The notes beneath the pieces were generated by a model that was not told where the DNA came from, did not search any database, and saw only the letters and a program-made list of their open reading frames with translations. A program made the translations under genes and the position numbers. DNA of 64,000 bases, taken from positions 186,001-250,000 of the IMG/VR virus record IMGVR_UViG_3300047472_000309. The stretch is one strand, 5' to 3'. Of this stretch, positions 44,461-63,921 are shown piece by piece (the stretch's first letter is position 1; the number at the start of each line of letters is the position of its first letter).

Positions 44461-44477
44461 TGCTTTTTTCACCAAAG

Positions 44478-44521
44478 AATAAAAAGGGAGACACCCCAAC
44501 TCCTGTGCTAGAAGTGTCTCC
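44478..44521 (-). terminator. Probable terminator
   Basis: GGAGACAC/GTGTCTCC stem followed by CTTTTTATT on the minus strand. Confidence 0.55.
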
Positions 44522-44531
44522 ATAAAACGGG

Positions 44532-48873: not shown

Positions 48874-49941
48874 TTAGTCAACCGTGAAGGGTGCCGTAGG
48901 CGGCGTGAAGTTTGCGGTGTAGCGCGCCAGGGCGCTGATGCGCAACTCGTCGAGATAGCCCTGCACCGGCAACGCAGTGTTCGCCGCATAGTTACCGACG
49001 GTCAGCGGGCTCGTGTTATCACCCCAGGTATTCGGACTCGTCTTGGTCATTACGGCGACGCCGTCGAGATACAGCGTGTAGGCGGTGCCGTGTTTGACAA
49101 AGGCGTAATGGTGCCAGTTACTAATGCTGGGGGCGGGCGACATATTGTATTCGCCGAGAGTATCCAAAGACGAATAGATATTGCCGCCGTAAATCTCGAT
49201 AATCGTCGTGCCCTTGTGAATGATCACCCCTTCGGCGTTCGAACTATTCAGATAGAGCCAGAACTCGATAGTGAAATCAGATTTCAAGTGCAGATTAGCG
49301 ACATCAGGTGTTTGAACATAACTGCCACTCACACCCAGCATGGACGAGCCACCAAATTTCGACTGGGCAGTAGACAAGGCTACGGTGCCCGTTCTGGTGA
49401 AGGTGTGCTGACCCGTGGTGTCGGTAAAAGTAGTGGAGCCATTCGCCCCGTCCATGTGCATGAGCAGAACAGTCTGGGGGGTCGCCCAGTTCAGATTCAC
49501 CGTCGCAGTGCCATCTTCGTAAATCAATGACCCGCTCGCCTGGATGGTGGCCGTAGCTGCTCCACCACCTGCTGGATAAGTCGGTGCGCTCACCCAGCTG
49601 ATTTCGCCGCGAATGAAACCATACCAGTCTGCCACCAAAGCGAGTGTGGCAGCCGGGTCGGTGGTACCACTGGGAATAACTACTGCGCCGGTTGGACTGG
49701 CTATTTCTGCCGCCAAGGCGAGACGCTTATACGTGATATCGACACTACCGATAAAGTTCGCATAATTACCCTGCGGGCCGGTGCCGGTCAAGGTCACTTT
49801 AGTATCTGCGCCATTGGCAAAAGAACCTGTTTGTAAATTACTCACCGTGACTTCATTGGGCAGATTAGGCGCCGAGGCATTCGTGGCGTCGATCAAAGCC
49901 AGCAGATTTTCTACCGGGGTTTTGCTAGGATTGATTTTCAT
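48874..49941 (-). CDS. Tail fibre protein: family-A attachment module plus LamG/ConA lectin domain
   Basis: LLALID..N...YKRL.L N-module; TVLLMHMDG...FTIEFW...WHHYAFV...GYLDELRIS..ARYT.NFTPP. Confidence 0.85.
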   Translation of the reverse strand: MKINPSKTPVENLLALIDATNASAPNLPNEVTVSNLQTGSFANGADTKVTLTGTGPQGNYANFIGSVDITYKRLALAAEIASPTGAVVIPSGTTDPAATLALVADWYGFIRGEISWVSAPTYPAGGGAATATIQASGSLIYEDGTATVNLNWATPQTVLLMHMDGANGSTTFTDTTGQHTFTRTGTVALSTAQSKFGGSSMLGVSGSYVQTPDVANLHLKSDFTIEFWLYLNSSNAEGVIIHKGTTIIEIYGGNIYSSLDTLGEYNMSPAPSISNWHHYAFVKHGTAYTLYLDGVAVMTKTSPNTWGDNTSPLTVGNYAANTALPVQGYLDELRISALARYTANFTPPTAPFTVD

Positions 49942-49944
49942 CTG

Positions 49945-51039
49945 TTAGTCCATCGTGAAAGGAGCCGCGGACGGGGTAAAGTTACTCGTGTAGCGCGCTA
50001 CACGAGAAATGCGCACTTCATCAATGTCGCCATTGAAGTAAAGTTCTGAACCCGCTGCCACCACCACTGCTCCAATCGATGCAGCATACACAGGGGTCGG
50101 CAGTGCATTACTGGCAGTGATTGAGGCTTTGGCAACCCCGTTGATGTAGATGGTCCAGACGTTGCCTGAACGCACTAATGCGACGTGCTGCCAAGTGTTA
50201 GCCACAATGGTGCCTGCGGCCGTGCCCAAGCCATTGATGAAGTACGAACCAGTGGAGGCGCTGTTTGACGCATACAGTGCCAGACCGCCGCCGGATGAAT
50301 ATAATTGCAAACCCCACGAACAGCAAATAATTCCGCGCTGCGCTGCATCGACCACGCTAGGGTTGATCCAGGCTTCGAGGGTGAAGTCACCAGCCTGAAA
50401 ATTCATCAGGCTATTAGAAAACGTCAGGGCGGCTGCACCGTTAAAAGCAGCCGAGCCTGCGCCGAACTTCTTCGCGGCTGTACTGAGTGTGACCGCACTA
50501 TTAGTAAGGGTGGCGCCGCCGTCATCGGTAAAGGGGATGGCATCAGCGTGGACCAGCAGATTAGTGAGCGGTTGGGTCCAGTTGACCGTGACGCTGGTCG
50601 AGCCGTCCTCGTAGACGTAGGAGCCACTTGATTGCAGCGTCACCGAGCCATTACCTGAACTCGCGGGAATCGTCAAACCGGGGGCGGTAATTTCACCCGG
50701 AATGAAGCCGTAATAGTTCTCGATCGCAAGCAGCGCAGCCGCGAGCGACGATGCGCGAGACACGGCAAGCGTACCGGTCGGGCTTGCTGTTTCTGCCGCC
50801 AGCGTCAGGCGCTTATACGTCACATCGACGCTGCCGGTAAAGTTGGCGTAATTACCCTGCGGGCCTGCACCAGTGAGGGTTATCTTCGTATCGGCGCCGT
50901 TCGCATACGTGCCTGACTGAAGGTTACTCACTGTCACCTCATTGGGAAGATTCGGCGCGGAAGGGTTCGAGGCATCAATAAGTGCCAACAGGTTTTGAAG
51001 GGCACTCTTACTCGGATCAATTTTCATACTGGTCGCCAA
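49945..51039 (-). CDS. Tail fibre protein: family-A module plus LamG domain; recent paralogue of 48874..49941
   Basis: Near-identical N-terminus; DFTLEAWI...WQHVALVR...GDIDEVRISR. Start may be ATG 51027. Confidence 0.85.
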   Translation of the reverse strand: MATSMKIDPSKSALQNLLALIDASNPSAPNLPNEVTVSNLQSGTYANGADTKITLTGAGPQGNYANFTGSVDVTYKRLTLAAETASPTGTLAVSRASSLAAALLAIENYYGFIPGEITAPGLTIPASSGNGSVTLQSSGSYVYEDGSTSVTVNWTQPLTNLLVHADAIPFTDDGGATLTNSAVTLSTAAKKFGAGSAAFNGAAALTFSNSLMNFQAGDFTLEAWINPSVVDAAQRGIICCSWGLQLYSSGGGLALYASNSASTGSYFINGLGTAAGTIVANTWQHVALVRSGNVWTIYINGVAKASITASNALPTPVYAASIGAVVVAAGSELYFNGDIDEVRISRVARYTSNFTPSAAPFTMD

Positions 51040-51077
51040 AATGAGGAGAGGTCATAAAATGCCCGTGTACGAATTGA

Positions 51078-51110
51078 CGGCATAAAAAAGCGGAGCCGAA
51101 GCCCCGCTTT
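51078..51110 (-). terminator. Terminator (UUCG loop) followed by TTTTTTATGCCG
   Basis: AAAGCGGGGC-TTCG-GCTCCGCTTT. Confidence 0.85.
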
Positions 51111-51128
51111 TCCTCAGCACTGAAATGC

Positions 51129-51677
51129 TTAGCTGGCGGCGTCGAAACCCGAGAGATCCGTCGTCGCAACAGCCGTGGACAGCGCAACCTGCGGCGCTTG
51201 CCAGGTCATGGCGATTGCTTGCAGCGAACCGTCCACGTACAGCAACGAACCCGCATTGGCCACCAGATCGAGCGTGGCCTGATTGCCGCTCTGCGCACCC
51301 GAAAGCGCCACGCCGGGATCGGCCGGATCTTCAAGATGCACTTCCGAGGCCACGAGGCCGAGCTGGGCGGCCAGTGCCGTGACGATGTCAGCGGCTGTGG
51401 TGCCGGTGGTCGCGGTATAGCTATCGACCGGGCTGAGCACCGAGTCGTTCAGACCCCGGCGCGTGTAGTTGACCGAGACCGAACCCGTGTAGCCCTGACC
51501 ACCAACGGCCGTCAGTGCCACTGTGGTATTACGGCCGTCGCCCGTATCGGACTTGACGCTGGGTGCACCTGCAGTCACTTGCGTGTTCGTGATCGTTTGG
51601 CCGGTGTTAGCAGCATTGACGAGCGCGAGCAGGTTGTCCAACGCCGACAACGATGCGTTGATTTTTGCCATTTCCAT
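51129..51677 (-). CDS. Family-A module-only virion protein
   Basis: LLALVNAAN...GRNTTV.LT...YTGSVSVNYTR; ends TDLSGFD. Confidence 0.75.
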   Translation of the reverse strand: MEMAKINASLSALDNLLALVNAANTGQTITNTQVTAGAPSVKSDTGDGRNTTVALTAVGGQGYTGSVSVNYTRRGLNDSVLSPVDSYTATTGTTAADIVTALAAQLGLVASEVHLEDPADPGVALSGAQSGNQATLDLVANAGSLLYVDGSLQAIAMTWQAPQVALSTAVATTDLSGFDAAS

Positions 51678-51759: not shown

Positions 51760-53307
51760 TTAGTCTATCGTGAATGCCGCAGCAGGCGGGGTGAAGTTTG
51801 CCGAGTAACGAGCAATCTTACTAAGGCGTAGCTCATCGATCCGGCCACTGAACGGCAGGTACGTGCTACCATTCAGGAAGCTACCGATCCACAACGCATA
51901 GTTGTTGCTACCAAACGTCGCGGAGCTCGTAACAGACTGAACCAATACCCCATCAACAAAACACGACCAGGTGTTGCCAGAGCGCACAAACGCAAAGTGC
52001 TGCCACGTTCCAACTTTGGTCTTCGACGAGTCCGGTGTGCCGACGATGACAGTGCCATCGGGACCCAAGATACGAACCAATCCACTAGTGGACTGGATGT
52101 ACTGATACCCGGCCTGCGCCGAAGTACCTTTGGACAGGATCATGCCGTTCTGGGTTATGTTGGTGTGCCATGCCCAGAATTCGATCGTGAGATCGCCCGT
52201 AAAGCTCAGATCCCCTGGATCGGTCACTGCAAGATAACCGGAACCCGACGGGAAATAGCCCGCCCCAAACATGCCGACGCTGCCTGCTGCCGCTGCGCCG
52301 TTGTTCGTCACCGTATGGCTGAGAACTTCCGTGTAGCCGGTATTGCCTGCATTATCGAAATGCATCAACAGCTTCGTACTGGCGGCAGGTCCTTGACCGG
52401 CAGCGTTGGCAAAGCCCGGCAGATTCAAGCTAGTGACCGCCGCGCTCAGCGCCACTGTGTTCATCAGGTAGACGTCGGTACCCGGCTTATACACGTAACT
52501 GTTTGCATCAGCCACCAGGTGAAGCTTGGTGGTGCCTGCAGCAACGGGACCGTCTACCACATCCATCGGATCAAGGGCCAAGCCATACTTCGTGTTGACC
52601 TGCGCGATCAGGGCACGGATCGTCGTGGCCGAGGCGATCGTACCGAGCAACCAGGTGTTATTGGCGCCACCTAGAAACGCGTTCGCAATATCCGTGCGAT
52701 TGTAATACAGCTTGTACGTGCCCGAGTACTGCTGCAGCAACGTCCCGATCGGCGCCACCGTCACGTAGGTGTTACAGTTCAGCTTCGAACTATCTACAAC
52801 GGGCGCGCTCACCGATAACTGCGACTGGGAGATCGTCTGCTTCGCGTCAGCCTGAATCAATGCCCACAAGCCCGTCAAACCACCTGTCTTGACCTGGGCC
52901 AGTTTCTTCTGCATGACGAATGCAGAGATTTGACGCAACTGACCTTTGGTTGACGACTTCTGCATCACAAAAGCTGACACCTGACGCAGCGCGCCACTAC
53001 TGGACAGCTTCGTCCACGTCACAGCAGGCATTGCCCGGAACCGGGCCGTCAGCGCATCCTGCGTCCATTGCAAGGCTGCCACGCGCCGAATTGACACTGC
53101 GGGATAATCTTGCGACCATTGCAGGGCTGTCACCTTACGCAACGTAACTGGGGTGGGTGAGCTGAACCACTGCACCGCCTGCATCTGACGGAAATACGCG
53201 TTGATGTTTTGTGTCGTCCACACGACAGGCGCGGCTTGACGAACCTGGGCACTGCTGCTCGTTCCTTGCCACACCAGTGGAGCGAAGTAGCGAATTGTTG
53301 TCGTCAT
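51760..53307 (-). CDS. Fibre/scaffold protein: eight 17-aa repeats, family-A module and LamG domain
   Basis: Arg at residues 6, 23, 40, 57, 74, 91, 108, 125; YKLYYNRTDI; LLMHFD...GRIDELRLSKIARY. Confidence 0.85.
   Translation of the reverse strand: MTTTIRYFAPLVWQGTSSSAQVRQAAPVVWTTQNINAYFRQMQAVQWFSSPTPVTLRKVTALQWSQDYPAVSIRRVAALQWTQDALTARFRAMPAVTWTKLSSSGALRQVSAFVMQKSSTKGQLRQISAFVMQKKLAQVKTGGLTGLWALIQADAKQTISQSQLSVSAPVVDSSKLNCNTYVTVAPIGTLLQQYSGTYKLYYNRTDIANAFLGGANNTWLLGTIASATTIRALIAQVNTKYGLALDPMDVVDGPVAAGTTKLHLVADANSYVYKPGTDVYLMNTVALSAAVTSLNLPGFANAAGQGPAASTKLLMHFDNAGNTGYTEVLSHTVTNNGAAAAGSVGMFGAGYFPSGSGYLAVTDPGDLSFTGDLTIEFWAWHTNITQNGMILSKGTSAQAGYQYIQSTSGLVRILGPDGTVIVGTPDSSKTKVGTWQHFAFVRSGNTWSCFVDGVLVQSVTSSATFGSNNYALWIGSFLNGSTYLPFSGRIDELRLSKIARYSANFTPPAAAFTID
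52906..53292 (-). repeat. Eight tandem 17-codon (51-nt) repeats, consensus R-x-h-x-A-h-x-W/M
   Basis: RYFAPLVW, RQAAPVVW, RQMQAVQW, RKVTALQW, RRVAALQW, RAMPAVTW, RQVSAFVM, RQISAFVM at an exact 17-aa period. Confidence 0.9.
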
Positions 53308-53317
53308 TCACTCCTCC

Positions 53318-54391
53318 TTAGTTAGTGGGCGTCAGTACGAACTGAGTCTGATTAATCTTCGTGCCCGTCCAGCTCGCACCATCCGGTGCTTTTGTCTGCC
53401 AAGGCAACTTCTGGTTTAGTACCAATCCATTGCCATTGGCAAACTGACCAAGCGATGAGACGTTACTGGAAGCGTCCGTAAAGGTCGCTGCAATCTTGGC
53501 TGGACCGGCCGCACTGGGTTGAAATGAGAGCGTCGGTTGAACTGCCAGGACTTTCTGGCCAGTATCATTAACCGTGGCGAGCATCGTCACCGCCAGGGAC
53601 TGGTTATCTACCGGAGACTGCGCATACGGACTGATGACAGGCGGGTTCTGGTTAGCCGTATTGAGTACCGTCACCAGATCGGCTGCGCCGTTGGGTGTCC
53701 ATTCCGAGCCAGAGACGGCCGCCGCGCGCGACGCTTTGGCGCGAATCGGCCCCAGTCGACCCGGCGTCGATGCATCTACATCCAGGAAGTAGAAATCGCG
53801 ATAGCCGCGCGCGTAATTCGCGCTGCCGGTCGACGCACCCCCAAAGGTAATGTAGCCGGTGCTGGCAAATACAGCGGACGTCACTGTACCGGAATTGATC
53901 AGAATGCCGTTGCCGTATACCTGGAACGTCAGCGCGACGCGATCGATAAAGACCTCGATGTAGATCTCACCACCCACTCCCACCATCCCTGCTGCGATCA
54001 GATGTGACTCATCGAGCAGCGAAGTCCAGCTACCGAAGGACGTGTTGCTGGACACGATGACAACGTGGCACGCCCCCACCGTGTTATTCACGATCAACTT
54101 CGTGCGGAAACCAAACCAATACTGCGTTGCCCCACTCCAGTCTTGCACGGCTGCGGTGGGCACGAAAAGCGCCCCACATTGTCCGGACGAATTGGCAGCG
54201 TTCGACAGAAAGCCATCGGCCGTCACGGAGAAGATGTTGCTTGGGGTACTGTTATTAACGTAGGTGAGCGGCTGACCGACGTTGCCAGTGTACTGGTTAT
54301 AGATCGTGTTGCCGTTATAACTCGATCCAGCAGCACTCAGTGTCATCCCCACTGGCGCATTCTCAAAATGCCACAAATCGTGAAGGGCCAT
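53318..54391 (-). CDS. Family-B virion/fibre protein (probable beta-sandwich)
   Basis: MALHDLWHFE; FGFRTK; YIEVFID; RGYRDFYFLD...RLGPI. Confidence 0.75.
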   Translation of the reverse strand: MALHDLWHFENAPVGMTLSAAGSSYNGNTIYNQYTGNVGQPLTYVNNSTPSNIFSVTADGFLSNAANSSGQCGALFVPTAAVQDWSGATQYWFGFRTKLIVNNTVGACHVVIVSSNTSFGSWTSLLDESHLIAAGMVGVGGEIYIEVFIDRVALTFQVYGNGILINSGTVTSAVFASTGYITFGGASTGSANYARGYRDFYFLDVDASTPGRLGPIRAKASRAAAVSGSEWTPNGAADLVTVLNTANQNPPVISPYAQSPVDNQSLAVTMLATVNDTGQKVLAVQPTLSFQPSAAGPAKIAATFTDASSNVSSLGQFANGNGLVLNQKLPWQTKAPDGASWTGTKINQTQFVLTPTN

Positions 54392-54406
54392 GTTCGTTAC
54401 TCTCTA

Positions 54407-55441
54407 TTACGGGGTGAGGGTCGCGACCATCGCCGCCAGCGACTGAGGCGTGAAGGACGTCCCATCCGGTGCTTTCTCGAGCACAAACGCGTTCTGATTC
54501 CAGTACATTTGTGCGCCGTTCGGATAGGTAATCTGTTTACCATTAACAGACTGGCCATTATACGCAACACTTGCCTGTGGTGCGAAGATGTAGCTTGGCG
54601 TGCGCTGACCCGACACGTCCGCTTTTGCAGCGAGAATACTTTCGCCTGCAATCAGGCCCGCATTCGAGAGCTTGAACTGCAGCGGGTCCATGCTCGCGGG
54701 CTCCGTCACCAGCGGTGCATTTTGCGTCGGCGTCGTTATACCCAGCGCCGTCGACAGATCAGCAAGCGCCGTGCTGCTATCGCTGGAGGTCCAGTTCGGT
54801 GCCGTCACGCTGGCCAAAGCAGCTGGCGTAACATCAATCGGACCAAGACGATTGCACTGTGTGGCGTCTTGCGTGTCGTCTAGGAAATAGACGTCGCGAA
54901 TCTGGAACACGTAGCCCGCTGCGCCGTTATTCCCCCACACCAGGTTACACTTGTTATCCGCCGACACAAACGCATTGAAGTCGAAGAACACCGAGGGCTG
55001 CGCCACACCATCGATCCAGACGACGATCTGCGTATTCGCCCGGTCGATCATGATTTCGACGTACTGGTTGGTATTGAGCGCGAGTTGCGTATTGCTCACC
55101 AACGTTTGTTTGGTGCCCGCTGTATTCGTCAAGAACAACACCGGTGTGGCGGTCGCGATATTATTGATGCTGACCCGAAAACCGATGAAACTGCGCCGGG
55201 TCGTAAAATCACTGAGCGCCTGATACGGATGATTCGCATTGGGCGAATAGGTCCCGTAATTCGTATTCGGATAGGGGTTAGTATCCGTGCGGAAATACAG
55301 CCAGCCACCGCTCGAATAGATTGTCCCATACTGGCTGTAAACACCGGTGATGGTGAAGTCACCGCGCAAGAACTGCATCACCGTCGTATAGGTGGTGTAA
55401 GCAGGCAGATTGTCGAAGCCCCAAAAATCTCGGATAGCCAT
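54407..55441 (-). CDS. Family-B virion/fibre protein
   Basis: MAIRDFWGFD; IGFRV; YVEIMID; RDVYFLDD...RLGPI. Confidence 0.75.
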   Translation of the reverse strand: MAIRDFWGFDNLPAYTTYTTVMQFLRGDFTITGVYSQYGTIYSSGGWLYFRTDTNPYPNTNYGTYSPNANHPYQALSDFTTRRSFIGFRVSINNIATATPVLFLTNTAGTKQTLVSNTQLALNTNQYVEIMIDRANTQIVVWIDGVAQPSVFFDFNAFVSADNKCNLVWGNNGAAGYVFQIRDVYFLDDTQDATQCNRLGPIDVTPAALASVTAPNWTSSDSSTALADLSTALGITTPTQNAPLVTEPASMDPLQFKLSNAGLIAGESILAAKADVSGQRTPSYIFAPQASVAYNGQSVNGKQITYPNGAQMYWNQNAFVLEKAPDGTSFTPQSLAAMVATLTP

Positions 55442-55464
55442 CTTTAAACTCTCTTGATGATAAC

Positions 55465-55507
55465 GAACATAAAAACCCCGACACCCTCCCTGAGGAGAGC
55501 GTCAGGG
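55465..55507 (-). terminator. Hairpin followed by TTTTTATG
   Basis: Imperfect stem at 55476-55507. Confidence 0.6.
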
Positions 55508-55521
55508 CTCTCGTGCCGTTA

Positions 55522-56598
55522 CTAGGTGGTCGACACGGGCTGGACGATCAACTGCGTCGCATTAAAGCGCGCATCACTCCACGCATTGCCACTCGGGTCC
55601 GTCGTTTGCGGACCCGATAGATCCCGACCGTAATCCATCGTCGTATCTGTGAAACTATAGGTAGGCAGATTCTTCGTGGCTGACCCGTTATTCAGTTGTG
55701 CCGTAACTTGCGCGGCCGTCGCCACGCTCGCCGCCATCTTGTACTGCACCGCAATCATGCCTGCACCCGCAGGCGCGGTCGACTGATACGTCACCGTGAT
55801 CGGGTCGTTGGTCGGGGCATTGGACTGCGTCGGCGCAGGTGCCGGGGCTGCGCTGTAGCCGGTCTGAAAATCCAGCAAGGCGGACTTACCGTCGCTTGAT
55901 GAGTAGTTCGGGGCGCTCACAGCCGCGTACTGGGCGACGGCCGACTGAATCGGACCCAGCCGCGTATTGGGTAGGGTGGCATCGGCATCGACGAAGTAGA
56001 AGTCCTGCAACGAGAAGTTACAGGCGTTCGTGGTCACTGCGTTCGAGCCAAATACCAGATACGTGAAGCCAGTCGCCAGCGCCGCCTTATCGATGATCTT
56101 CAACCCATCGACCCAGGCCGAGTACTGACTATTGGCGATGTCAAGCATCACTTCCACGTACTGTGTAACGTTCACCGTCCGGCTGAGCTGTGTCTCGTTC
56201 ACCAGTGAGGTCGGCACCGCTGTCGCCGAGGAAGCCGTCCCAAATACCGACGAAGTGCCCGGTGCGGGAATCGCTGAGCTCCAGGTGCGAAAACCAAGGT
56301 AAGCTTTGGTCGCGCCGCTTTGCAGCAAAGGAATATCGGCAAGTGCCACGACCAGTGCCTGAGCCTGCGAAGTGCTATTGCCAAATCCCAATCCACCACC
56401 GCGATAAGTGCCACCCGACGCACCTGCCACCACGCTATTGATCACGCAGTTTGACGCACCAGCGCGCAGAATCAGCGTACCCGGATTACCGGTGAGCTGG
56501 TTATACGCATTGTTCGGTGTGTACGCAGCGATCGCAGTCAGCGGGACGTTGGATGCGTTGGCAATGTGATCGTACGTCCACAAGGCTCGCAAAGTCAT
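55522..56598 (-). CDS. Family-B virion/fibre protein
   Basis: MTLRALWTYD; LGFRT; YVEVMLD; QDFYFVD...RLGPI. Confidence 0.75.
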   Translation of the reverse strand: MTLRALWTYDHIANASNVPLTAIAAYTPNNAYNQLTGNPGTLILRAGASNCVINSVVAGASGGTYRGGGLGFGNSTSQAQALVVALADIPLLQSGATKAYLGFRTWSSAIPAPGTSSVFGTASSATAVPTSLVNETQLSRTVNVTQYVEVMLDIANSQYSAWVDGLKIIDKAALATGFTYLVFGSNAVTTNACNFSLQDFYFVDADATLPNTRLGPIQSAVAQYAAVSAPNYSSSDGKSALLDFQTGYSAAPAPAPTQSNAPTNDPITVTYQSTAPAGAGMIAVQYKMAASVATAAQVTAQLNNGSATKNLPTYSFTDTTMDYGRDLSGPQTTDPSGNAWSDARFNATQLIVQPVSTT

Positions 56599-56680
56599 GT
56601 TAATCTCTCTTCAAAGAAACTGGGTCTGGAAGCCATTTAGTAAAAAAATAACTTCCAGAATACACATCATTAGCCGCCTT

Positions 56681-58354
56681 TTAGTCGAGCACAAAGGGTG
56701 CCGCAGGCGGGGTAAAGTTCGCGGTGTAGCGCGCGATGTTACTCACCCGCAGTTCATCGATGTAGCCTGGGAACTGCGAAGCCGTGTTGTACTGGTTGCC
56801 GCCAATCGTCCACGTACTACCCGATAGTCCAAAGGTCAGTGCCGACGTCAGAGTACCTTGGGCGACCCCGCCGATGTAACCCGTGTAGACACCATTCGCG
56901 TACACCACAGCACAGTGCTGCCATTTGTTTAGCGTAAAGGCTGCAGCCGAGGCCAGTGACTTCCAGCCCGAGCCGTCGGTCAGGTAGATACCCAGTCCCT
57001 TGTCGCTTTGCTGACCAATGGAGGTTTGTGTCGTCGTCGTGTTGGCGGTCTTCGAACTGAGAATGGTTGTGTCGCCCAGGGCTGCGGTCCGATAGAGCCA
57101 GAACTCAACCGTCATGGCGTTACCAAGCACCATCGTCGAATCGGAGGCAACCGAGAGGTTACCTGTGGTACCCGAGTTATACGACTTGCTCCCCATGGCC
57201 ACTTGACCCGTGGTAAGCACGCCATTACCGTTCGACGTCCAGGTCCGACCTGTGTCATCGACAAAGCTTTCCATGTGCATCAAGAGCACGGTGTTCAGGG
57301 TCTTCGGCGTGAGGATCGCGCTCGTCGCATTGATCTTTGCCGGAGTCCACAACCCACCATCCGGTGCCTTACGCTGCACGCCCCACTTCTGGTTATAGAG
57401 GTTCGTGTTCGGTGACACCACAATTTTACCCGCATCCAGCGTGTTCGATGCCTGACTAAACGACACATCGATCGAATTCGACGCTGAATCACCGATCAGG
57501 GTAAGTTGTGGCTGCACGGCGATGATGGGGGTATTCGCCGACACACCGGTGCTCATGTTCGCAGTCACGGGTTGATTATTCGCCGGGGCTGACGCACTAG
57601 GCGTCGTGACCGGCGGGTTCTGCAAGGCAGTCGTGATTGCTGTCGGCAAATCCGCCGCACTATTGAGCGTCCAGCCCGCTCCAGCGATATTCGAAAGCGC
57701 GGCGGGCGAGGAGCGAATCGGTCCCAATCGTACCGTATCCGTGCTGTCGAAATCCAGGAAGTAGAAGTCCCGATAACCTCGTGCAGCATTCGCCGTACCT
57801 GCCGTACCGCCCGTACCAAATACACCATAGCCGGTTGCGGGAAACGCGCTGGCGCCATACGCCGCCGAGCGCACGAGATTACCATTCACATACAACCAGT
57901 ACGTGAATGTCGCTGAGTCCACGATGAGCTCCACATAGAGCTCAGTATTGGCGGGGGCCACCAGATCTGCTTCGTTGATCCAGATCAGCAGCGTGGCGGT
58001 CGCCCAGCCTGCGGTTGTAATGAAGACTCGGCCAGGCGTGGAGCCTGTGACGGCCTGAGTCGACTTGGTGCGAAAACCAATGCCCCACTTGGTGGCCCCC
58101 GACATGTTCAGCGCCTGCGCCAGCTTGAACCAAATCATGCTCCCGTTGCCGCTGGAGTTATTCGTCGAAGTGGCAAAGCCGTTTGCATCCACTGCAAGCG
58201 GGCTGCTTGCGTAGGTGTACGTGCAGCCTGGATTGCCCGTATAGTAGTTGTAAACGTTGCTCGGACCCGTTGTCGAGGTGAGGTCAGTCGTGCCGGTGAG
58301 CAAACTTGTACCCACTGGCGCATTATCAAACGACCACAAGTCATGGATTGCCAT
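56681..58354 (-). CDS. Family-B virion/fibre protein with an appended C-terminal LamG domain
   Basis: MAIHDLWSFD...RGYRDFYFLD..RLGPI; TVLLMHME...GYIDELRVSNIARY. Confidence 0.8.
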   Translation of the reverse strand: MAIHDLWSFDNAPVGTSLLTGTTDLTSTTGPSNVYNYYTGNPGCTYTYASSPLAVDANGFATSTNNSSGNGSMIWFKLAQALNMSGATKWGIGFRTKSTQAVTGSTPGRVFITTAGWATATLLIWINEADLVAPANTELYVELIVDSATFTYWLYVNGNLVRSAAYGASAFPATGYGVFGTGGTAGTANAARGYRDFYFLDFDSTDTVRLGPIRSSPAALSNIAGAGWTLNSAADLPTAITTALQNPPVTTPSASAPANNQPVTANMSTGVSANTPIIAVQPQLTLIGDSASNSIDVSFSQASNTLDAGKIVVSPNTNLYNQKWGVQRKAPDGGLWTPAKINATSAILTPKTLNTVLLMHMESFVDDTGRTWTSNGNGVLTTGQVAMGSKSYNSGTTGNLSVASDSTMVLGNAMTVEFWLYRTAALGDTTILSSKTANTTTTQTSIGQQSDKGLGIYLTDGSGWKSLASAAAFTLNKWQHCAVVYANGVYTGYIGGVAQGTLTSALTFGLSGSTWTIGGNQYNTASQFPGYIDELRVSNIARYTANFTPPAAPFVLD

Positions 58355-58441
58355 AACCTACTCCAATGTAATTCGATGACATAAGCGGACACCCAATCTC
58401 CTCTCCTCACCTAGGAGAAGAGACCGAATGCCCTCTCATGT

Positions 58442-60166
58442 TTAGTTGATGTTCGCCGCTGTGGTCGACTGCGGTTGCAACACCAGGTTAGTCGCCGAAA
58501 TGGTACTGCTAGTCCAGGCGTTGCCATTCGGATCGGTCGTCTGAATGCCCGCCAGATCTCGTGTGTACTGCGCTGCGGTATCGCGAAACTGATACGTCGC
58601 CAGTGCCTTGTTGGTTGCGCCTTCTTGGAGCGAAGCCAACAGGTTTGTCGCAAACGGTACCTGCGCGGCGAGCTTATACTGCATCGCGAGAACCTTCTGT
58701 CCGGCCGGAACGCTCGCAGAGAAGTTCACCGTCATGGGTTGATTATCCGCGCCGTTTTGGACGAACGGTGTAATAGCAGGTGTGGCCGCGTAAGCCGTTT
58801 GCAAAGCCGACACTGTGTTACCACTCGAATCTGCCACGTACGTCGAGCCATTAAGCACGCTCGCGTCCAGATGCATCAGGAGCATTGTGTTGGCATCCGT
58901 CGTGAACGGCCCAGTCGGCGGAGTAAAGCCTGTCGTGTAGCGTGCCACATTCGAGACCCGGAACTCATCAATGTAACCTTGCCAGGGACTGGTTAGATTG
59001 TTATTATTGCCGAGAATCAGGTTCGCCGTATTGTTACCGAATGTCGCGTTGCTCGCCACGTTACCCAACGCCACCCCGTTCTGGTAAATGGTCCAGGTGC
59101 CTTGGTAGCGGACCAGCGCCAGATGGAACCACTGGTTGACCACCGGGTTACCTGTCACACTGAGCGCGGGCGTGCCCGAACTCTGGTCGGTAAGGAGCTG
59201 CCACACGCCTGAGACATATTGCAAACGCCCCCACGGTGAAGCGCCTGAGTCCTTACCCAGAAAACCTGCCGACTGCCCAGCATTGGTGCTCATGGCCCAG
59301 CACTCGTACGTCATGTCACCCGTTACCGTGCGGTACTGCACGGCATCAGGAATCACCACTGCGCCGCTGGCAGCACCATTCGTCGTAAATGAAGCGGGGC
59401 CAAACTTCGCCTGAGCATTCGAAATCGCCGATGCGCCATTCAGCGTACCGATAAAGTTTCCGTAGTTCGGCGCTTGCACGCCGCTGACAAGCGGGCTAAG
59501 CGGCGTGCTCGTGATCGGACCGAGACGACCATTGGGCTTGGTGGCGTCCACATCCAAGAAGTAGAAGTCTCGGAAGGCCTGTCCGAACGAGCCGCTAAAG
59601 GTTTGACCACTGTAGACGAAGTGAGTGAAACCGGTTGGCAGCGTCCCACTGGTAGTCGGCAGGCCATTGACGTAAGTCTGATACGTGTGGTTAGCGTTAT
59701 CCAGGAAAACTTCGACGTACTGTGCACCTGCTACGCCCGCTGTCACGCGATTAAGCTGGGTTTCGTTGATAAGTGAAACAATGTTAGCGCCTGAACTGCC
59801 GAGCGCGCCCGACGCGGAAGACGGCAACACACCGAAACAATTACAACCGCTTGGTGCAAGACCAGTGGCGTAGGTACGGAAGCCCAACCAGGCCTGCGTA
59901 GCGCCACCCTGAAACAGACCAGAATCCGCCAGCGAAATCACATAACCCGCATACAGCGTGGAGTTACTGACCGCCAAACTCAGCCAACCCGGTGAAGGCG
60001 TGGTGCTGATGTTAGCGCCATTGGAGCTGTTGCCGGTCATGATCGCGCCAGGCGCGCCGTACTGAGTCTGAAGGCTATTCGGCGTGGCATAGGTAGTGCC
60101 GACCGTCAACGCAAACGCAGCCGTGAGCTGAACATGGTCAAACGAGATTAATGCGCGGAGCGTCAT
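58442..60166 (-). CDS. Family-B virion/fibre protein with an internally inserted, circularly permuted LamG domain
   Basis: MTLRALISFD; the LamG core ends ARYTTGFTPP then DANTMLLMHLD, after which family-B sequence resumes. Confidence 0.8.
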   Translation of the reverse strand: MTLRALISFDHVQLTAAFALTVGTTYATPNSLQTQYGAPGAIMTGNSSNGANISTTPSPGWLSLAVSNSTLYAGYVISLADSGLFQGGATQAWLGFRTYATGLAPSGCNCFGVLPSSASGALGSSGANIVSLINETQLNRVTAGVAGAQYVEVFLDNANHTYQTYVNGLPTTSGTLPTGFTHFVYSGQTFSGSFGQAFRDFYFLDVDATKPNGRLGPITSTPLSPLVSGVQAPNYGNFIGTLNGASAISNAQAKFGPASFTTNGAASGAVVIPDAVQYRTVTGDMTYECWAMSTNAGQSAGFLGKDSGASPWGRLQYVSGVWQLLTDQSSGTPALSVTGNPVVNQWFHLALVRYQGTWTIYQNGVALGNVASNATFGNNTANLILGNNNNLTSPWQGYIDEFRVSNVARYTTGFTPPTGPFTTDANTMLLMHLDASVLNGSTYVADSSGNTVSALQTAYAATPAITPFVQNGADNQPMTVNFSASVPAGQKVLAMQYKLAAQVPFATNLLASLQEGATNKALATYQFRDTAAQYTRDLAGIQTTDPNGNAWTSSTISATNLVLQPQSTTAANIN

Positions 60167-60235
60167 GATTCCCTCTGTCAAAAAGCTTAATGCATATTCC
60201 AGGAAAGCCTCTGGGAGGCTCTCCCAGAATCGGTA

Positions 60236-60580
60236 TTACGCTTGTCGCGGCGTTTCGTTGTACTGCAAAACCAGAAGATTGTGTGGACCATTCGCCCACG
60301 GCAACTCCAGCACCAACGCGTACTTGAACAAAGCGTTCGAGGGTAGGTGCGTGTGGTTCACGCCGTTAAACTTCACCTCAGTCCCAGCCAACGTATAAGG
60401 CTCTTCTTCTTTGTCGGTCCATTGGGCACGATGCTCGCCCTTGTCATGGGTGCTCAAAGATGCCGCCAGAAGCGTCGCATCCGTCGCACTCAATACACCG
60501 AGTGGTACTTTCGTCAGCACATCACCATCGCTGGAAAAGTCCGTGAAGAAGAGATAGTTCGGCCAAAAAGTCGTTGCCAT
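60236..60580 (-). CDS. Stand-alone C-terminal half of a family-A fibre protein
   Basis: TTFWPNYLFFTDFSS resembles AVYGPAYLYPYDFTS; FKYALVLEL...LLVLQYN resembles YKYVMAIQL...LYLHYN; AAGGA RBS. Confidence 0.65.
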   Translation of the reverse strand: MATTFWPNYLFFTDFSSDGDVLTKVPLGVLSATDATLLAASLSTHDKGEHRAQWTDKEEEPYTLAGTEVKFNGVNHTHLPSNALFKYALVLELPWANGPHNLLVLQYNETPRQA

Positions 60581-60593
60581 CTCACATCCTTTC

Positions 60594-61094
60594 TTAGAAG
60601 CCCGTCAGTACGTTCGAGTAGAACAGATTACTGATGTTAGGCAAGGGAGCCAACACGCAGTCAAATGACCCGGTGTACCCGTAGGAGGTCGACAGCGCAG
60701 TCAACGTCACGTGGGTGTTACCGTCGCTGCCGGTCGTGGTCTGCGCGTCGGCAATATCTGCCATCGTGAGCGTGAAGCCATACTGGTCACGAATCGTGGT
60801 GAGCACCGTGGACACATCGTTACCCGGTGCGGCCGTAATCAGCACCGGCGAGAAGTTGGACCACGCACCCAGATCGAGTCGATCGTAGTACAGCGTCAGG
60901 TAGCCCCGCATGGGAGCGCCCGGATTCATCAACACACTAACTTTGGTGTTCTTTCCACCCGCCACGTCCGCTTGTTCAGCGGTGGTCGTAGGCTTGATAG
61001 CCTGGACAGTGAATTGGCTTGAAGTAACCGTCAGGCCAGAGGCCGCACTGATCATTGACGCGAGGTCATCAATCGAGCTTTGATACAGACTCAC
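60594..61094 (-). CDS. Family-A module-only protein (N-terminal half)
   Basis: KNTKVSV...GYLTLYYDRLDL; ends NVLTGF. Confidence 0.75.
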   Translation of the reverse strand: MSLYQSSIDDLASMISAASGLTVTSSQFTVQAIKPTTTAEQADVAGGKNTKVSVLMNPGAPMRGYLTLYYDRLDLGAWSNFSPVLITAAPGNDVSTVLTTIRDQYGFTLTMADIADAQTTTGSDGNTHVTLTALSTSYGYTGSFDCVLAPLPNISNLFYSNVLTGF

Positions 61095-61106
61095 GCTGAC
61101 CTCCCG

Positions 61107-61988
61107 TTAATTAAAATGCAAGTAGAGCTGACCCTGAAACCAGGACCCTGCGACAGCCGTGATCACTGTCACGTTAGCGTACTTGTTACTGTTCGCACCC
61201 GGCACGCTTGCAGCGGGCAGCACATAGCGCGTCATCGCCAAATTACCCAGACCGCCTTGGGTAGCTGAATCCTGCCCACTGAAATTCAGGTCTGGGCGGC
61301 TTTGTTGCAAATACGCGAGCACAGCCGAGTAGTTCGCCTGGGTCCAGTTGGTCGGTGTGGCTGACGCAACGGACGAAGGCAAAGCCAGCAAGGCCGTGCG
61401 AATCTGTGAGCAATCCAACCCATAGGTCAACACGTCGGCTTGGGGCTTACGGCCACCGCCAAAGGTATTGCCCCCTGGATACAGCTTACCAGCGAGCACT
61501 TGATTCGTGATCGCCTGGTGCATGGTCGGCACCCCCTGCGTCCACTTAAACGTGAACGAGCCTTCGTAGCACAGCGAGCCTGCGACGATCGAAACCGGGT
61601 ACGACGTTCCGGAGGTAAAGCTCGTGTTGCTAAAGTCACTCGGCACCAACTCCGTACCGTACTTCGTATTGAACGCCGTACAGAACTGCGCCGCCGTCAT
61701 GGTAGTTGAGCCGAGATAGTTATCCAGCGTCAACGTCATGCTGCGGAAAAGATTGGCGAGGTTAATTCGCCGGTAGTACAGCGTCTGCGTCCCGATATAC
61801 TTACCGAGGTTACCCGGCACTGAGAGCAGTCTAAGACTCGTGTCCTGGATCTGTCCCGACCCAGGCGTTACTGCAGTTGGCACCAACGTCCGAAGCATGT
61901 CGACCGTCAGCGGCACCTTCAAGCCCGGATTCGACGTGTTAATCAACCCGAGCAAGGTGTTCAACTGCGTGTCAAGAAATGGGTACAT
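61107..61988 (-). CDS. Family-A virion/fibre protein
   Basis: LLGLINTSN...YIGTQTLYYRRINL; C-terminal LYLHFN. Confidence 0.78.
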   Translation of the reverse strand: MYPFLDTQLNTLLGLINTSNPGLKVPLTVDMLRTLVPTAVTPGSGQIQDTSLRLLSVPGNLGKYIGTQTLYYRRINLANLFRSMTLTLDNYLGSTTMTAAQFCTAFNTKYGTELVPSDFSNTSFTSGTSYPVSIVAGSLCYEGSFTFKWTQGVPTMHQAITNQVLAGKLYPGGNTFGGGRKPQADVLTYGLDCSQIRTALLALPSSVASATPTNWTQANYSAVLAYLQQSRPDLNFSGQDSATQGGLGNLAMTRYVLPAASVPGANSNKYANVTVITAVAGSWFQGQLYLHFN

Positions 61989-62004
61989 TCAACACCTCGT
62001 TTCA

Positions 62005-62034
62005 GGGAGTGGGGGTGACCCACTCCCCTATGCT
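62005..62034. terminator. Hairpin with TATGCT on the plus side
   Basis: GGGAGTGGG-GGTGA-CCCACTCCC-CTATGCT. Confidence 0.65.
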
Positions 62035-62040
62035 CTCGAC

Positions 62041-62934
62041 TTAGAAGTTGTTCGGGTCGAACGGATCGTTGTAGTGCAGATACAACGTGCCCGAAGGCGT
62101 CGTCTGACTCGCCGCCAGCTGAATGGCCATCACGTACTTGTACGCCGGATTAGTCGGATTGTTCACTGCGTCATTCAGTCCGTTCGAGAGAATGGTCGCC
62201 CCCGTCAAGTTCCAAGTCGTGTTCGCACCCGTGTCCACCCACAACGCCTTACCTGCGCCAACATCTACCGCCTGGATAGCGGCTAACACGGCATCGAGCT
62301 GCGCTTGCGTCATCGCGCCCGGCGCATAGGTGAGGAAGGTCGATTGCCATGACGTAAAGTCGTACGGATACAGATAGGCCGGACCGTACACCGCGGTAGC
62401 GGGCGGTGCTGACGCATCGGCCACCGGATAGTTAATACCCGGCAATTGCGTGGTCGAGGCAGCTGCATCAAGCGGCACGCCGCCTGCGACGACATTGAGC
62501 ATCACACTACCTTGCCAGCCAAGCGAATTCGGATCGGCCGAAAGCTGCACCTGACCCGTACCGTCGCCATTGAGCGTGATGGGCAGATTCTGCAAATCCC
62601 CCTGCACGAACTGGATACCCAGGTAGTATGCGAGCTGCGGTAGGATGTCCCAGGTCGTCTGAGGGTTGCTCACGGCCAGATCCGTGACACCGGGCAGATT
62701 GGCCAGCTGGGCCAAATCGAGGCGATTGTAGAGAATCACCTGCGAGCCTTGATAACTTACTGAAGCCGCCGTTACTTTCACAGCGGTGTTGCGATCGCTT
62801 GACAGACCTTGCCAGGTCCCCGAGACCACTTTCGGATTCGAGAACGACAGATCAGACGCCATAAACGGCGTCGCATTGGCCGCGTTGATCGCGTTCAGCA
62901 AATCAGTCAAGGATGGGAGTTGAAAAGTCGACAT
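62041..62934 (-). CDS. Family-A virion/fibre protein
   Basis: LLNAINAAN...RNTAVKV...YQGSQVILYNRLDL; LYLHYND. Confidence 0.78.
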   Translation of the reverse strand: MSTFQLPSLTDLLNAINAANATPFMASDLSFSNPKVVSGTWQGLSSDRNTAVKVTAASVSYQGSQVILYNRLDLAQLANLPGVTDLAVSNPQTTWDILPQLAYYLGIQFVQGDLQNLPITLNGDGTGQVQLSADPNSLGWQGSVMLNVVAGGVPLDAAASTTQLPGINYPVADASAPPATAVYGPAYLYPYDFTSWQSTFLTYAPGAMTQAQLDAVLAAIQAVDVGAGKALWVDTGANTTWNLTGATILSNGLNDAVNNPTNPAYKYVMAIQLAASQTTPSGTLYLHYNDPFDPNNF

Positions 62935-62943
62935 ATCTCACCC

Positions 62944-63921
62944 TTAAACGTTGTAATGCAAGATGATCCGGCCCGCACCCCACGACGCTGCTCCAGGCAG
63001 ATCGAGATACAGTGCGCGATTGAAGTACTTGCTGTCCGCTTCCGGCAGGGCCGCACTGGGCAGGGTCACGTTCGTGAACTTTAGCCCATACAGACTGTAC
63101 GGGGTCGAGGCCGGATTGGTGAAGTTGTACTGCCCGACGGTTGCTGCGTTGATCGAAGCCAGCAGCGAGTTATGGACTGTCGCGCCTGTGCCGGTTTGGG
63201 TGCCCAGGGCGTAGCTGGTCAAGTAAACAAGGACTTGAGCCAAGCTCTGGCTCGCCGCTACACCCGCTTGGTTAAGCGCATTAGTCCAGTCAATCGAGTA
63301 GAAATCCAGATCCGGCACGTAGATCGAGTTATCGACCACGTTACGCCCACCAGGGAACACTCGCGCGTTTTCCAGACTCGTCACCGAAATCATCGAACCG
63401 ATGTCTTGCGGCGCTTGCACCCAGTAAAGCGCAAAGCTCCCGATGAAACCGGGGCTGCCGGTGGCGGCAGCGACGTTCACCGAGCTGTTACGCGTGCCTG
63501 CGGCCAGACCGATCGCCGCAACGGCGTTGGTGTTACCCGCGGGCAGGCTTGCATCGACGATGTCGGTTGCGCTCAGGCTCAGACCGTACTTGGCGTTGAT
63601 CGATGGCAACAAGTCCGAGATCTTGTACGGGGAAACACCTGCTCCAGCAGGCGAATACTTGTAAATAACGATCGGCAGATTGCGAAACAAAATGCCGAAA
63701 TCCAACCGACGATACAACAGCGTGGTGTTACCCACGTATTTGGTTCCGGCCTGTGCGGTGACCTTGATCGACGTATTCTGAACATTACCGCCCGTGGGAG
63801 TGACAGCGGTCGGCGTCCCGTAAAGCGCATTCGTCGCGGTCAGCGGTACAGGCAGAGAGGGATTCGCTTGGTTGATCAGGTCAACCAGCATCTGCATGGA
63901 CTGCTTGGGATAAAGAGACAT
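62944..63921 (-). CDS. Family-A virion/fibre protein
   Basis: LVDLINQAN...QNTSIKV...YVGNTTLLYRRLDF; IILHYNV. Confidence 0.78.
   Translation of the reverse strand: MSLYPKQSMQMLVDLINQANPSLPVPLTATNALYGTPTAVTPTGGNVQNTSIKVTAQAGTKYVGNTTLLYRRLDFGILFRNLPIVIYKYSPAGAGVSPYKISDLLPSINAKYGLSLSATDIVDASLPAGNTNAVAAIGLAAGTRNSSVNVAAATGSPGFIGSFALYWVQAPQDIGSMISVTSLENARVFPGGRNVVDNSIYVPDLDFYSIDWTNALNQAGVAASQSLAQVLVYLTSYALGTQTGTGATVHNSLLASINAATVGQYNFTNPASTPYSLYGLKFTNVTLPSAALPEADSKYFNRALYLDLPGAASWGAGRIILHYNV

What the first reader, a model, noticed from the sequence alone, without database searches (positions are those of the whole stretch)
52906..53292. Eight exact-period 17-aa repeats: a candidate scaffoldin that docks multiple fibre heads
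Seen: the period is exactly 17 aa while the sequence diverges, keeping an Arg, a strand-like hydrophobic core and Trp (six) or FVMQK (two), with polar linkers. The gene lies directly downstream of five family-B paralogues, which lack the family-A attachment module that this protein has. Inference: each repeat is a donor beta-strand that recruits one family-B subunit, giving a branched, cellulosome-like receptor-binding arbor whose valence scales with repeat number. Caveats: eight repeats versus five visible partners, and a plain beta-helix/solenoid is an alternative.
Basis: partly seen in the sequence, partly recalled or inferred. Interest (0 to 1): 0.78.

Follow-up and report, generated by a model that had tools for sequence, protein, structure and literature searches.

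The report
Arginine-repeat adaptor on jumbo-phage fibre protein
A jumbo-phage tail-fibre protein starts with eight exact 17-residue arginine-bearing repeats, an undescribed module that always travels with, and grows in step with, a neighbouring block of lectin-like virion genes, so it is probably the piece that ties those proteins onto the phage's fibre network.

Summary
Residues 2-137 of the 515-aa protein (window 51760-53307, minus strand) are eight gap-free 17-aa units, with z = 17 against shuffles. Every unit has an Arg at position 5. Six units have Trp at position 12 and two have Met.

The rest of the protein is a DUF7941 N-domain plus linker (phiKZ gp127 / Goslar gp22 family) followed by a Laminin_G_3 lectin domain. 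The genome is a 310-kb relative of Burkholderia phage FLC9.

The repeat module matches no Pfam, PHROG or PDB entry. It occurs in only about 25 proteins, from three jumbo-phage clades, with 2, 3, 4, 6, 8 or 9 units. The period of 17 and the basic residue are kept throughout.

In all 16 cassettes examined, the repeat gene sits directly after a block of family-B genes (LamG-like virion proteins). Unit number rises with B number (1:2, 2:3, 2:4, 3:4, 5:6, 5:8, 5:9, 6:8). Whole cassettes are gained or lost together. DUF7941 copy number does not scale with unit number.

It is not one unit per B. AlphaFold gave no confident fold, and no binding was tested. A plain beta-shaft remains a live rival.

The parts
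51760..53307 (-). Whole gene, 515 aa: Arg-repeat array + DUF7941 N-domain and linker + Laminin_G_3
   Evidence: ORF; Pfam domains; orthologues.
52897..53304 (-). Eight 17-aa Arg repeats (aa 2-137). Units 1-8 are 53254-53304, 53203-53253, 53152-53202, 53101-53151, 53050-53100, 52999-53049, 52948-52998 and 52897-52947.
   Evidence: Periodicity z = 17 and invariant Arg. Unit HMM finds 8 hits here and none elsewhere in the genome. Net charge +14, pI 11.9, no Glu. dN/dS 0.125.
52363..52896 (-). DUF7941 N-terminal globular domain plus linker (aa 138-315; linker motif ends '..NLPGF')
   Evidence: PF25613 hit, 63 bits against a cut-off of 27, aa 147-315. Alignment with 11 paralogues. Family profile hits PDB 9xqd, phiKZ gp127, E = 4e-4.
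51808..52248 (-). Laminin_G_3 (ConA-like lectin) C-terminal domain, aa 354-500
   Evidence: PF13385, 63 bits. This part is swapped between orthologues while the N-terminal half is conserved.
53318..60181 (-). Family-B block, five paralogues: 53318-54391, 54407-55441, 55522-56598, 56681-58354 (C-terminal LamG) and 58442-60181 (LamG inserted between the two B domains)
   Evidence: Alignment A2. These are the only five copies in the genome. phrog_2448. LamG-like fold and 'virion structural protein' clusters in the ESM Atlas.
60236..60580 (-). 114-aa ORF resembling a stand-alone DUF7941 C-terminal domain; it marks the boundary between the A block and the B block
   Evidence: ORF. It is conserved at the same position in other loci. 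It aligns with the L012 counterpart, which carries a weak DUF7941 mark.
60594..63921 (-). Upstream DUF7941 (family A) genes inside the window: 60594-61094, 61107-61988, 62041-62934 and 62944-63921. Five more lie beyond the window end.
   Evidence: PHROG hits; genome scan for PF25613 gives 14 matches.
48874..51677 (-). Downstream DUF7941 genes: 51129-51677 (N-domain + linker only), 49945-51039 and 48874-49941 (N-domain + LamG)

Best explanation
**What the gene is.** It encodes one subunit of the DUF7941 fibre system that phiKZ-like jumbo phages hang on the outer baseplate. It has a DUF7941 N-domain, the family's linker strand and a LamG lectin head. What sets it apart is an N-terminal array of 17-residue units that look like beta strands.

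**The array.** Each unit carries a basic residue followed by a hydrophobic stretch. In this phage the array has a net charge of +14 and contains no Glu.

**Proposed function.** I propose the array is a multivalent adaptor. It binds the acidic, LamG-like family-B virion proteins encoded immediately upstream. It thereby ties them to the DUF7941 fibre network, which is anchored on the peripheral baseplate. Longer arrays would hold more B proteins.

**Shown:**
- the repeat anatomy;
- the domain memberships;
- the cassette linkage with family B;
- the scaling of unit number with B number;
- conservation of each individual unit.

**Inferred:**
- physical binding;
- the binding mode (strand addition and/or Arg-acid contacts);
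- stoichiometry, which is not one unit per B and may be one to two units per B;
- which partner recruits which.
For: **Cassette linkage**
- In 16 cassettes from three clades the repeat gene directly follows a B block (clade NTDs share only about 40% identity). The loci are the window, FLC9, L003-L005, L012-L017, L023, L024 and L032.
- Every B block whose downstream gene lies on the contig is followed by a repeat gene.

**Gain and loss as units**
- L012 has two cassettes (2 B + 4 units, and 3 B + 4 units).
- L013 has 2 B + 4 units and 1 B + 2 units.
- L014 has neither a second B block nor a second repeat gene.

**Scaling**
- B:unit states are 1:2, 2:3, 2:4, 3:4, 5:6, 5:8, 5:9 and 6:8.
- Spearman is 0.89 on 15 modules, 0.89 on the 8 distinct states (permutation p = 0.003) and 0.82 on 6 lineage means (p = 0.044).
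- Within one lineage, L015 lacks the alpha-type B and has 3 units instead of 4.

**Family A is a negative control**
- Its copy number does not scale with unit number. There are about 8-9 upstream copies with either 4 or 8 units.

**Each unit is conserved individually**
- Identity is 62.5% for the same unit across orthologues, against 25% between different units.
- This includes polar positions 6, 11 and 13-15, as expected for specific contacts.

**Charge**
- Arrays are basic in all clades (+1 to +14) and all B proteins are acidic.

**No autonomous fold predicted**
- pLDDT is 27-45 in the full-length model and 36 for the array alone. Only beta strands are predicted.

**Precedent**
- DUF7941 subunits are predicted to join by intermolecular beta-strand addition and form filaments in vitro (PMC13742148).
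- phiKZ gp127 sits on the outer baseplate (PMC13250141).
Against: - No interaction was tested.
- The ratio is never 1:1 and varies from 1.2 to 2.
- Recent changes are uncoupled: 5:8 against 6:8 against 5:9 within the FLC9-like clade.
- The correlation rests on few independent lineages.
- The strict 17-residue period (rarely 16) across very divergent sequences fits a regular fold or polymer better than separate docking beads.
- A relative of family B is modelled as a complete fold on its own (pTM 0.89).
- B homologues occur in Chi-like siphoviruses that have no such array.
- The low AlphaFold confidence may only reflect the 8-sequence alignment.
- Most phage structural proteins are acidic, so charge complementarity is weak evidence.
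Confidence: 0.4

Rival explanations
1. The array is a self-contained or homo-oligomeric beta structure: a short beta-solenoid, a triple beta-spiral-like shaft or an 8-strand meander. It acts as a spacer or stalk between the attachment point and the DUF7941 and LamG parts. The Arg and Trp residues would form structural ladders.
For: - The exact period of 17 is kept in all clades, with 2-9 units.
- Only beta strands are predicted, two per unit.
- The only non-orthologous sequence hit is a 2068-aa phage protein built of beta-rich tandem domains.
- Repeated fibre shafts of 15-17 residues are known in adenovirus and reovirus (from memory).
Against: - AlphaFold gives no confident fold for the array (pLDDT 27-45).
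- A net charge of +14 with only two acidic residues and eight aligned Arg would be hard to stabilise without an acidic partner.
- There is no Pfam match to any shaft or solenoid repeat.
- This reading does not explain why unit number follows B number, or why the gene always follows a B block.
- Surface-type polar positions are conserved unit by unit.
Confidence: 0.28
2. The array anchors this one DUF7941 subunit to the peripheral baseplate, or serves as a hub that offers several strands to the N-domains of other DUF7941 (family A) subunits. It would start or branch the DUF7941 filaments.
For: - DUF7941 N-domains are predicted to accept a strand from another protomer.
- Filaments need a baseplate anchor.
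- Only one or two of about 14 paralogues carry the array.
- The short N-domain + linker proteins are the most acidic in the cluster, at -6 to -11.
Against: - The family's own linker motif ('..S..V....L.GF') does not resemble the 17-mer. The unit HMM hits no family-A protein.
- Family-A numbers do not scale with unit number.
- phiKZ and Goslar build the system without such an array: their DUF7941 proteins were not among the only five hits of the 1.8-billion-protein search with the array.
Confidence: 0.17
3. The array is an exposed polybasic segment that sticks to acidic host surface polymers (LPS, capsule, flagella) and adds avidity to the LamG head.
For: The array has a strong positive charge in all clades. 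The protein is a receptor-binding-type protein with a lectin head. DUF7941 fibres are proposed to act in first host contact.
Against: - The N-terminal half is conserved while the C-terminal lectin part is swapped. That is the usual signature of a virion-side module, not a host-side one.
- Unit-specific conservation and the fixed period are not needed for non-specific adhesion.
- This reading gives no reason for the link with B number.
Confidence: 0.08

Closest known systems
DUF7941 fibre proteins of chimalliviruses (Goslar gp22/gp23, phiKZ gp126/gp127; PMC13742148, PMC13250141)
   Same: The protein carries the DUF7941 N-domain and linker, followed by a carbohydrate-binding domain as in Goslar gp86, gp92 and gp161. 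It lies in a large paralogous cluster in a phiKZ-like jumbo phage. Assembly by strand addition has been proposed for the family.
   Different: None of the described members is reported to have an N-terminal repeat array. A 1.8-billion-protein search with the array found only orthologues and one unrelated repeat protein. The described system has no family-B partner block.
Branched multi-RBP complexes (CBA120 TSP1-4 with T4 gp10-like docking domains; hyperbranched fibres of Klebsiella jumbo phage phiKp24, PMC9700779)
   Same: One protein may carry several different receptor-binding proteins on a single attachment point. The receptor-binding genes are many and sit in tandem.
   Different: Those systems dock through folded domains of trimeric proteins, not short tandem peptide units. 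No gp10-like or other known docking domain is detected here. The CBA120 comparison is from memory.
Cellulosome scaffoldin (cohesin-dockerin)
   Same: The concept is shared: a repeated module whose copy number sets how many partners are held.
   Different: Cohesins are folded domains of about 150 aa joined by linkers of variable length. Here the units are 17 aa with a fixed period, and there are no cohesin or dockerin hits. This is an analogy only.
Adenovirus/reovirus triple beta-spiral fibre shaft repeats (about 15-17 aa)
   Same: Both are short tandem beta-strand repeats in a viral attachment fibre, with a small residue or Pro at a turn position.
   Different: There is no Adeno_shaft Pfam hit. 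The hydrophobic pattern differs (positions 4, 7, 10 and 12, with an invariant Arg). The array sits at the extreme N terminus with no separate tail-binding segment. The pattern comparison is from memory.

Membership tests
DUF7941 (PF25613) fibre subunit | Match to the Pfam model above its gathering score | tested here: met
   63 bits against a cut-off of 27, aa 147-315, model positions 12-187. The genome scan gives 64 bits.
DUF7941 (PF25613) fibre subunit | N-terminal globular domain followed by the family's linker segment | tested here: met
   Alignment with 11 paralogues shows the shared N-domain and the linker motif ending in L-x-G-F at about aa 285-300. The C-terminal DUF7941 domain is replaced by LamG.
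DUF7941 (PF25613) fibre subunit | Relationship to a structurally placed member (phiKZ gp127 on the outer baseplate) | tested here: met
   The profile of the window's family-A proteins hits PDB 9xqd chain 0, PHIKZ127, E = 4e-4. Single sequences gave no hit.
DUF7941 (PF25613) fibre subunit | Head-to-tail oligomerisation by strand addition; presence in the virion | not testable with these tools
   No multimer prediction or proteomics was available. This is known only for Goslar gp22.
Laminin_G_3 / ConA-like lectin | Match to PF13385 above its gathering score | tested here: met
   63 bits against a cut-off of 27.6, aa 354-500.
Donor-strand complementation system (chaperone-usher type) | The acceptor subunit has an incomplete fold that needs a foreign strand | tested here: inconclusive
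   An ESM model of a close feature-match of family B is a confident complete LamG-like fold as a monomer (pTM 0.89). The B proteins of this window were not modelled themselves.
Cellulosome-type scaffoldin | Cohesin modules on the scaffold and dockerin on the partners | tested here: not met
   No cohesin or dockerin hit in the gene or in the five B proteins.
Triple beta-spiral shaft (Adeno_shaft PF00608) | Match to the shaft repeat model, or a confident repeated fold | tested here: not met
   No Pfam hit at E <= 0.1. AlphaFold pLDDT is 27-45. Trimer prediction was not possible.
   There is a positive trend (Spearman 0.82-0.89) and strict cassette linkage. However, the ratio is 1.2-2, and there are uncoupled changes within the FLC9-like clade.

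The most novel reading that the evidence does not exclude
The Arg-repeat array is a new kind of countable docking rail. Each 17-residue unit, or pair of similar units, would place one particular LamG-like family-B protein. A single DUF7941 subunit would then template an ordered, multi-headed receptor-binding assembly. Its valence would be set by unit number, and whole 'B block + rail' cassettes would move between jumbo phages.
Probability: 0.22. Interest if true: 0.8.

Novelty: new variant of a known kind. Interest (0 to 1): 0.6.

Why it matters
DUF7941 fibres were only described in 2026. The outer baseplate and fibres of phiKZ-like phages remain largely unmodelled. How these phages mount a dozen or more different receptor-binding proteins is an open question.

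A short, countable repeat that co-varies with a block of lectin-like virion genes gives a concrete and cheap hypothesis for one such attachment step. It can be tested in an isolated phage (FLC9 on Burkholderia glumae) by complex prediction, pull-downs and virion proteomics.

If the repeat turns out to be only a shaft, it is still a new repeat family with an unusual invariant Arg and a fixed period.

Tried and rejected
**Searches on the array that found nothing**
- DNA-level tandem repeat: none.
- Pfam and PHROG on the array: no hit.
- PDB sequence search with the gene and with a B protein: nothing meaningful.
- ESM Atlas on the array: scores up to 0.74 and TM up to 0.30, which is noise.
- A metagenome scan and a third IMG/VR scan added no new lineages.

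**Structure prediction**
- Two AlphaFold runs gave no usable fold: pLDDT 27-45 in the array of the full-length model (mean 50.7) and mean 35.8 for the array alone.

**Ideas tested and rejected**
- The units might be copies of the DUF7941 linker strand. Rejected: the unit HMM hits no other ORF in the genome, and the linker motif differs.
- The conserved B N-terminus ('M-A-I-R-D-F-W..') might be a ninth kind of unit. Rejected: in a PSSM scan of 58 B proteins the N-terminal window is never the best site, and its scores are negative in all but one (the exception, +0.5, is an ORF-start artefact).
- The array might be related to the repeat-rich protein that follows the B-like genes in Chi-like phage YSD1. 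Rejected at this sensitivity: hhalign probability is 1.3%.

**The one non-orthologous hit**
- A 2068-aa protein, P0009 (E = 7e-12 summed over 8 stretches), has units of about 123 aa. Pairwise similarity to the array is weak (30% over 67 aa). It matches no known family. I treat it as a lead for the beta-shaft reading, not as a homologue.

**An artefact**
- An apparent single unit at the start of a 190-aa family-A ORF (genome 253234-253806) is most likely caused by picking an upstream start codon.

Full report
**1. The observation**

The ORF at window 51760..53307 on the minus strand encodes 515 aa. Residues 2-137 are eight contiguous 17-residue units with no insertions or deletions.

A BLOSUM62 autocorrelation of the first 140 residues is negative at every lag from 5 to 59 except 17, 34 and 51. 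It is 1.58 at lag 17. The best lag of 3000 shuffles averages -0.19 with sd 0.10, giving z = 17.

The unit columns are as follows:
- position 4 is hydrophobic;
- position 5 is Arg in all eight units;
- position 7 is hydrophobic;
- position 9 is Ala or Pro;
- position 10 is hydrophobic;

Mean identity between units is 25%. Tandem Repeats Finder sees nothing at the DNA level, so the array is old. A unit HMM finds exactly these eight units and no other ORF in the genome. The array is strongly basic, with net charge +14, pI 11.9 and no Glu. It evolves under purifying selection, with dN/dS 0.125 against the closest relative.

**2. The rest of the protein and the neighbourhood**

Pfam places DUF7941 (PF25613) at aa 147-315 and Laminin_G_3 at aa 354-500. 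The array itself has no Pfam or PHROG match.

The window belongs to a 310,654-bp phage genome with terminal repeats. Its nearest isolate is Burkholderia glumae jumbo phage FLC9, at about 74% nucleotide identity. Upstream of the cluster lie phiKZ-type internal head protein genes.

All genes in the cluster are on the minus strand. In the order they are transcribed:
- nine DUF7941 ('family A') genes, four of them inside the window;
- a 114-aa ORF that looks like a stand-alone DUF7941 C-domain;
- five 'family B' paralogues;
- the repeat gene;
- three more family-A genes.

Family B has only these five copies in the genome. It is phrog_2448. In the ESM Atlas it matches clusters named 'virion structural protein', and the best of these is a confident LamG-like model (pTM 0.89).

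**3. What is known about family A**

Two 2026 papers are directly relevant.

The first is the phiKZ structural atlas. It places one gp127 per star lobe, at the end of the gp139 band of the outer baseplate (PMC13250141).

The second is the Goslar paper (PMC13742148). It reports that:
- DUF7941 proteins (N-domain, disordered linker, C-domain) are very abundant virion components;
- AlphaFold3 predicts head-to-tail oligomers, in which one protomer's linker adds a strand to the next protomer's N-domain;
- purified gp22 forms filaments;
- some members carry carbohydrate-binding domains.

A profile of the window's family-A proteins hits PDB 9xqd, PHIKZ127, at E = 4e-4. The gene under study is one such subunit: N-domain plus linker plus LamG, with an extra N-terminal array.

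**4. Distribution of the array**

Searching 1.8 billion representative proteins with the array alone found four orthologues and one unrelated repeat protein. Word-based and locus searches added a few more.

Searching with the DUF7941 part revealed more distant relatives with the same architecture but different unit numbers:
- 9 units: P0008, P0010, P0011;
- 8 units: the window, FLC9 gp310, P0002-P0007;
- 6 units: L024 and P0019-P0023;
- 4 units: P0012, P0013, P0016-P0018, and second genes in L012 and L023;
- 3 units: P0014;
- 2 units: a second gene in L013.

Across roughly a hundred units the period stays at 17 (three spacings of 16). The basic residue is always present; the only Lys seen is at the fourth unit of L024 and its close relatives. 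Trp at position 12 is not universal; clades II and III mostly use Ile, Leu, Phe, Met or Val there.

Among nine orthologues, the same unit is 62.5% identical on average, while different units are 25% identical. Polar positions 6, 11 and 13-15 are conserved unit by unit. Units form similar neighbour pairs (1~2, 4~5, 7~8), and unit 3 resembles unit 6.

**5. The link with family B**

In every locus examined, the repeat gene directly follows a block of B genes. Every B block whose downstream gene lies on the contig is followed by a repeat gene.

| Locus or cassette | B genes : units |
|---|---|
| window, L003, L004 | 5:8 |
| L005, FLC9 | 6:8 |
| L016 | 5:9 |
| L012 first cassette, L013 first cassette, L014, L017 | 2:4 |
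| L012 second cassette, L023 | 3:4 |
| L015 | 2:3 |
| L013 second cassette | 1:2 |
| L024, L032 | 5:6 |

- L014 has neither a second B block nor a second repeat gene.
- Within one lineage, L015 lacks the alpha-type B present in L012 and L023 and has three units instead of four. Its block is probably complete, because the gene before it ends in a LamG domain.
- Spearman correlation is 0.89 over 15 modules, which are not independent. It is 0.89 over the eight distinct states (permutation p = 0.003) and 0.82 over six lineage means (p = 0.044).
- Family-A numbers do not scale. About eight or nine upstream copies accompany either 4 or 8 units.

Against a simple rule:
- units always outnumber B genes;
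- the ratio runs from 1.2 to 2;
- inside the FLC9-like clade, one extra B or one extra unit occurs without a matching change in the other.

**6. Structure**

AlphaFold2 with the eight available homologues gave pLDDT 27-45 over the array in the full-length model and a mean of 35.8 for the array alone. Only beta strands were predicted, about two per unit, and units 7-8 were drawn as one long hairpin.

This fails to support a self-contained solenoid. The alignment is shallow, however, and oligomers could not be modelled, so the result is weak evidence. Fold comparison was not available.

**7. Interpretation**

The best-supported reading is that the array is a multivalent adaptor. It would physically couple the acidic, lectin-like B proteins to a DUF7941 subunit, and so to the baseplate-anchored fibre network.

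The linkage, the scaling, the unit-specific conservation and the precedent for strand addition in this family all point this way. None of them is a direct test. I put this reading at 0.4.

The rivals are:
- A regular beta shaft or small beta domain (0.28). The rigid period favours it. The weak similarity to a beta-rich giant fibre protein also favours it. It leaves the link with family B unexplained.
- A baseplate anchor, or a hub for family-A N-domains (0.17). The units do not resemble the family's linker, and family-A numbers do not scale.
- Non-specific binding of acidic host polymers (0.08).

**8.

The scaffold idea is partly supported. However, 'one donor strand per B subunit' is not borne out by the numbers, and strict donor-strand complementation is not required by the B fold.

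The module itself is undescribed. The system it belongs to (DUF7941 fibres, multi-RBP jumbo phages) is known, so I rate it a new variant of a known kind.

Noticed in passing
window 60236-60580 (-) together with 60594-61094 (-): A 166-aa DUF7941 protein (N-domain + linker only) is followed by a 114-aa ORF that resembles a stand-alone DUF7941 C-terminal domain, i.e. a split DUF7941 gene. The pair sits at the boundary between the A block and the B block in all related loci.
   Followed up: partly
L008 (Salmonella phage YSD1) 5809-12205: Family-B relatives (27-30% identity) occur as tandem paralogues (YSD1_31-34) in Chi-like flagellotropic siphoviruses. They are directly followed by a 709-aa repeat-rich protein, YSD1_35. 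Its C-terminal third has a 25-aa period; its N-terminal part has a 37-aa period with '[AV]LQWDGE' motifs. hhalign found no significant relation to the Arg array.
   Followed up: partly
L012 15880-17202; L013 12486-13709: Some related jumbo-phage genomes carry two 'B block + repeat gene' cassettes in tandem. The second gene has 4 or 2 units.
   Followed up: yes
window 58442-60181 and 56681-58354 (-); L001 9001-12231 (FLC9 gp310): The LamG module is shuffled freely. It is inserted between the two B domains in one paralogue, C-terminal in another, and C-terminal on several DUF7941 proteins. FLC9 gp310 and P0007 carry an additional Gly-rich region and a second LamG-like end after the same array + DUF7941 half.
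   Followed up: no
genome G000:C1:89593-90024 (outside the window): A fourteenth DUF7941 copy (152-aa ORF) lies far from the main cluster of thirteen.
   Followed up: no
L006 (Ralstonia phage FLC1-1B) 3554-9234: A different jumbo phage has a set of LamG-bearing proteins that all start with the short motif 'MLE[AFL]LL'. This may be another kind of shared N-terminal anchor.
   Followed up: no
window 43726-44523 (-): A thymidylate kinase gene lies about 4 kb downstream of the fibre cluster. The same gene is found at the equivalent place in clade I and II loci (L003-L005, L013, L014).
   Followed up: no
P0009 (2068 aa, metagenomic): The only non-orthologous hit of the array is a giant phage protein made of tandem beta-rich units of about 123 aa, whose strands are also spaced about 17 residues apart. 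It matches no known family.
   Followed up: partly
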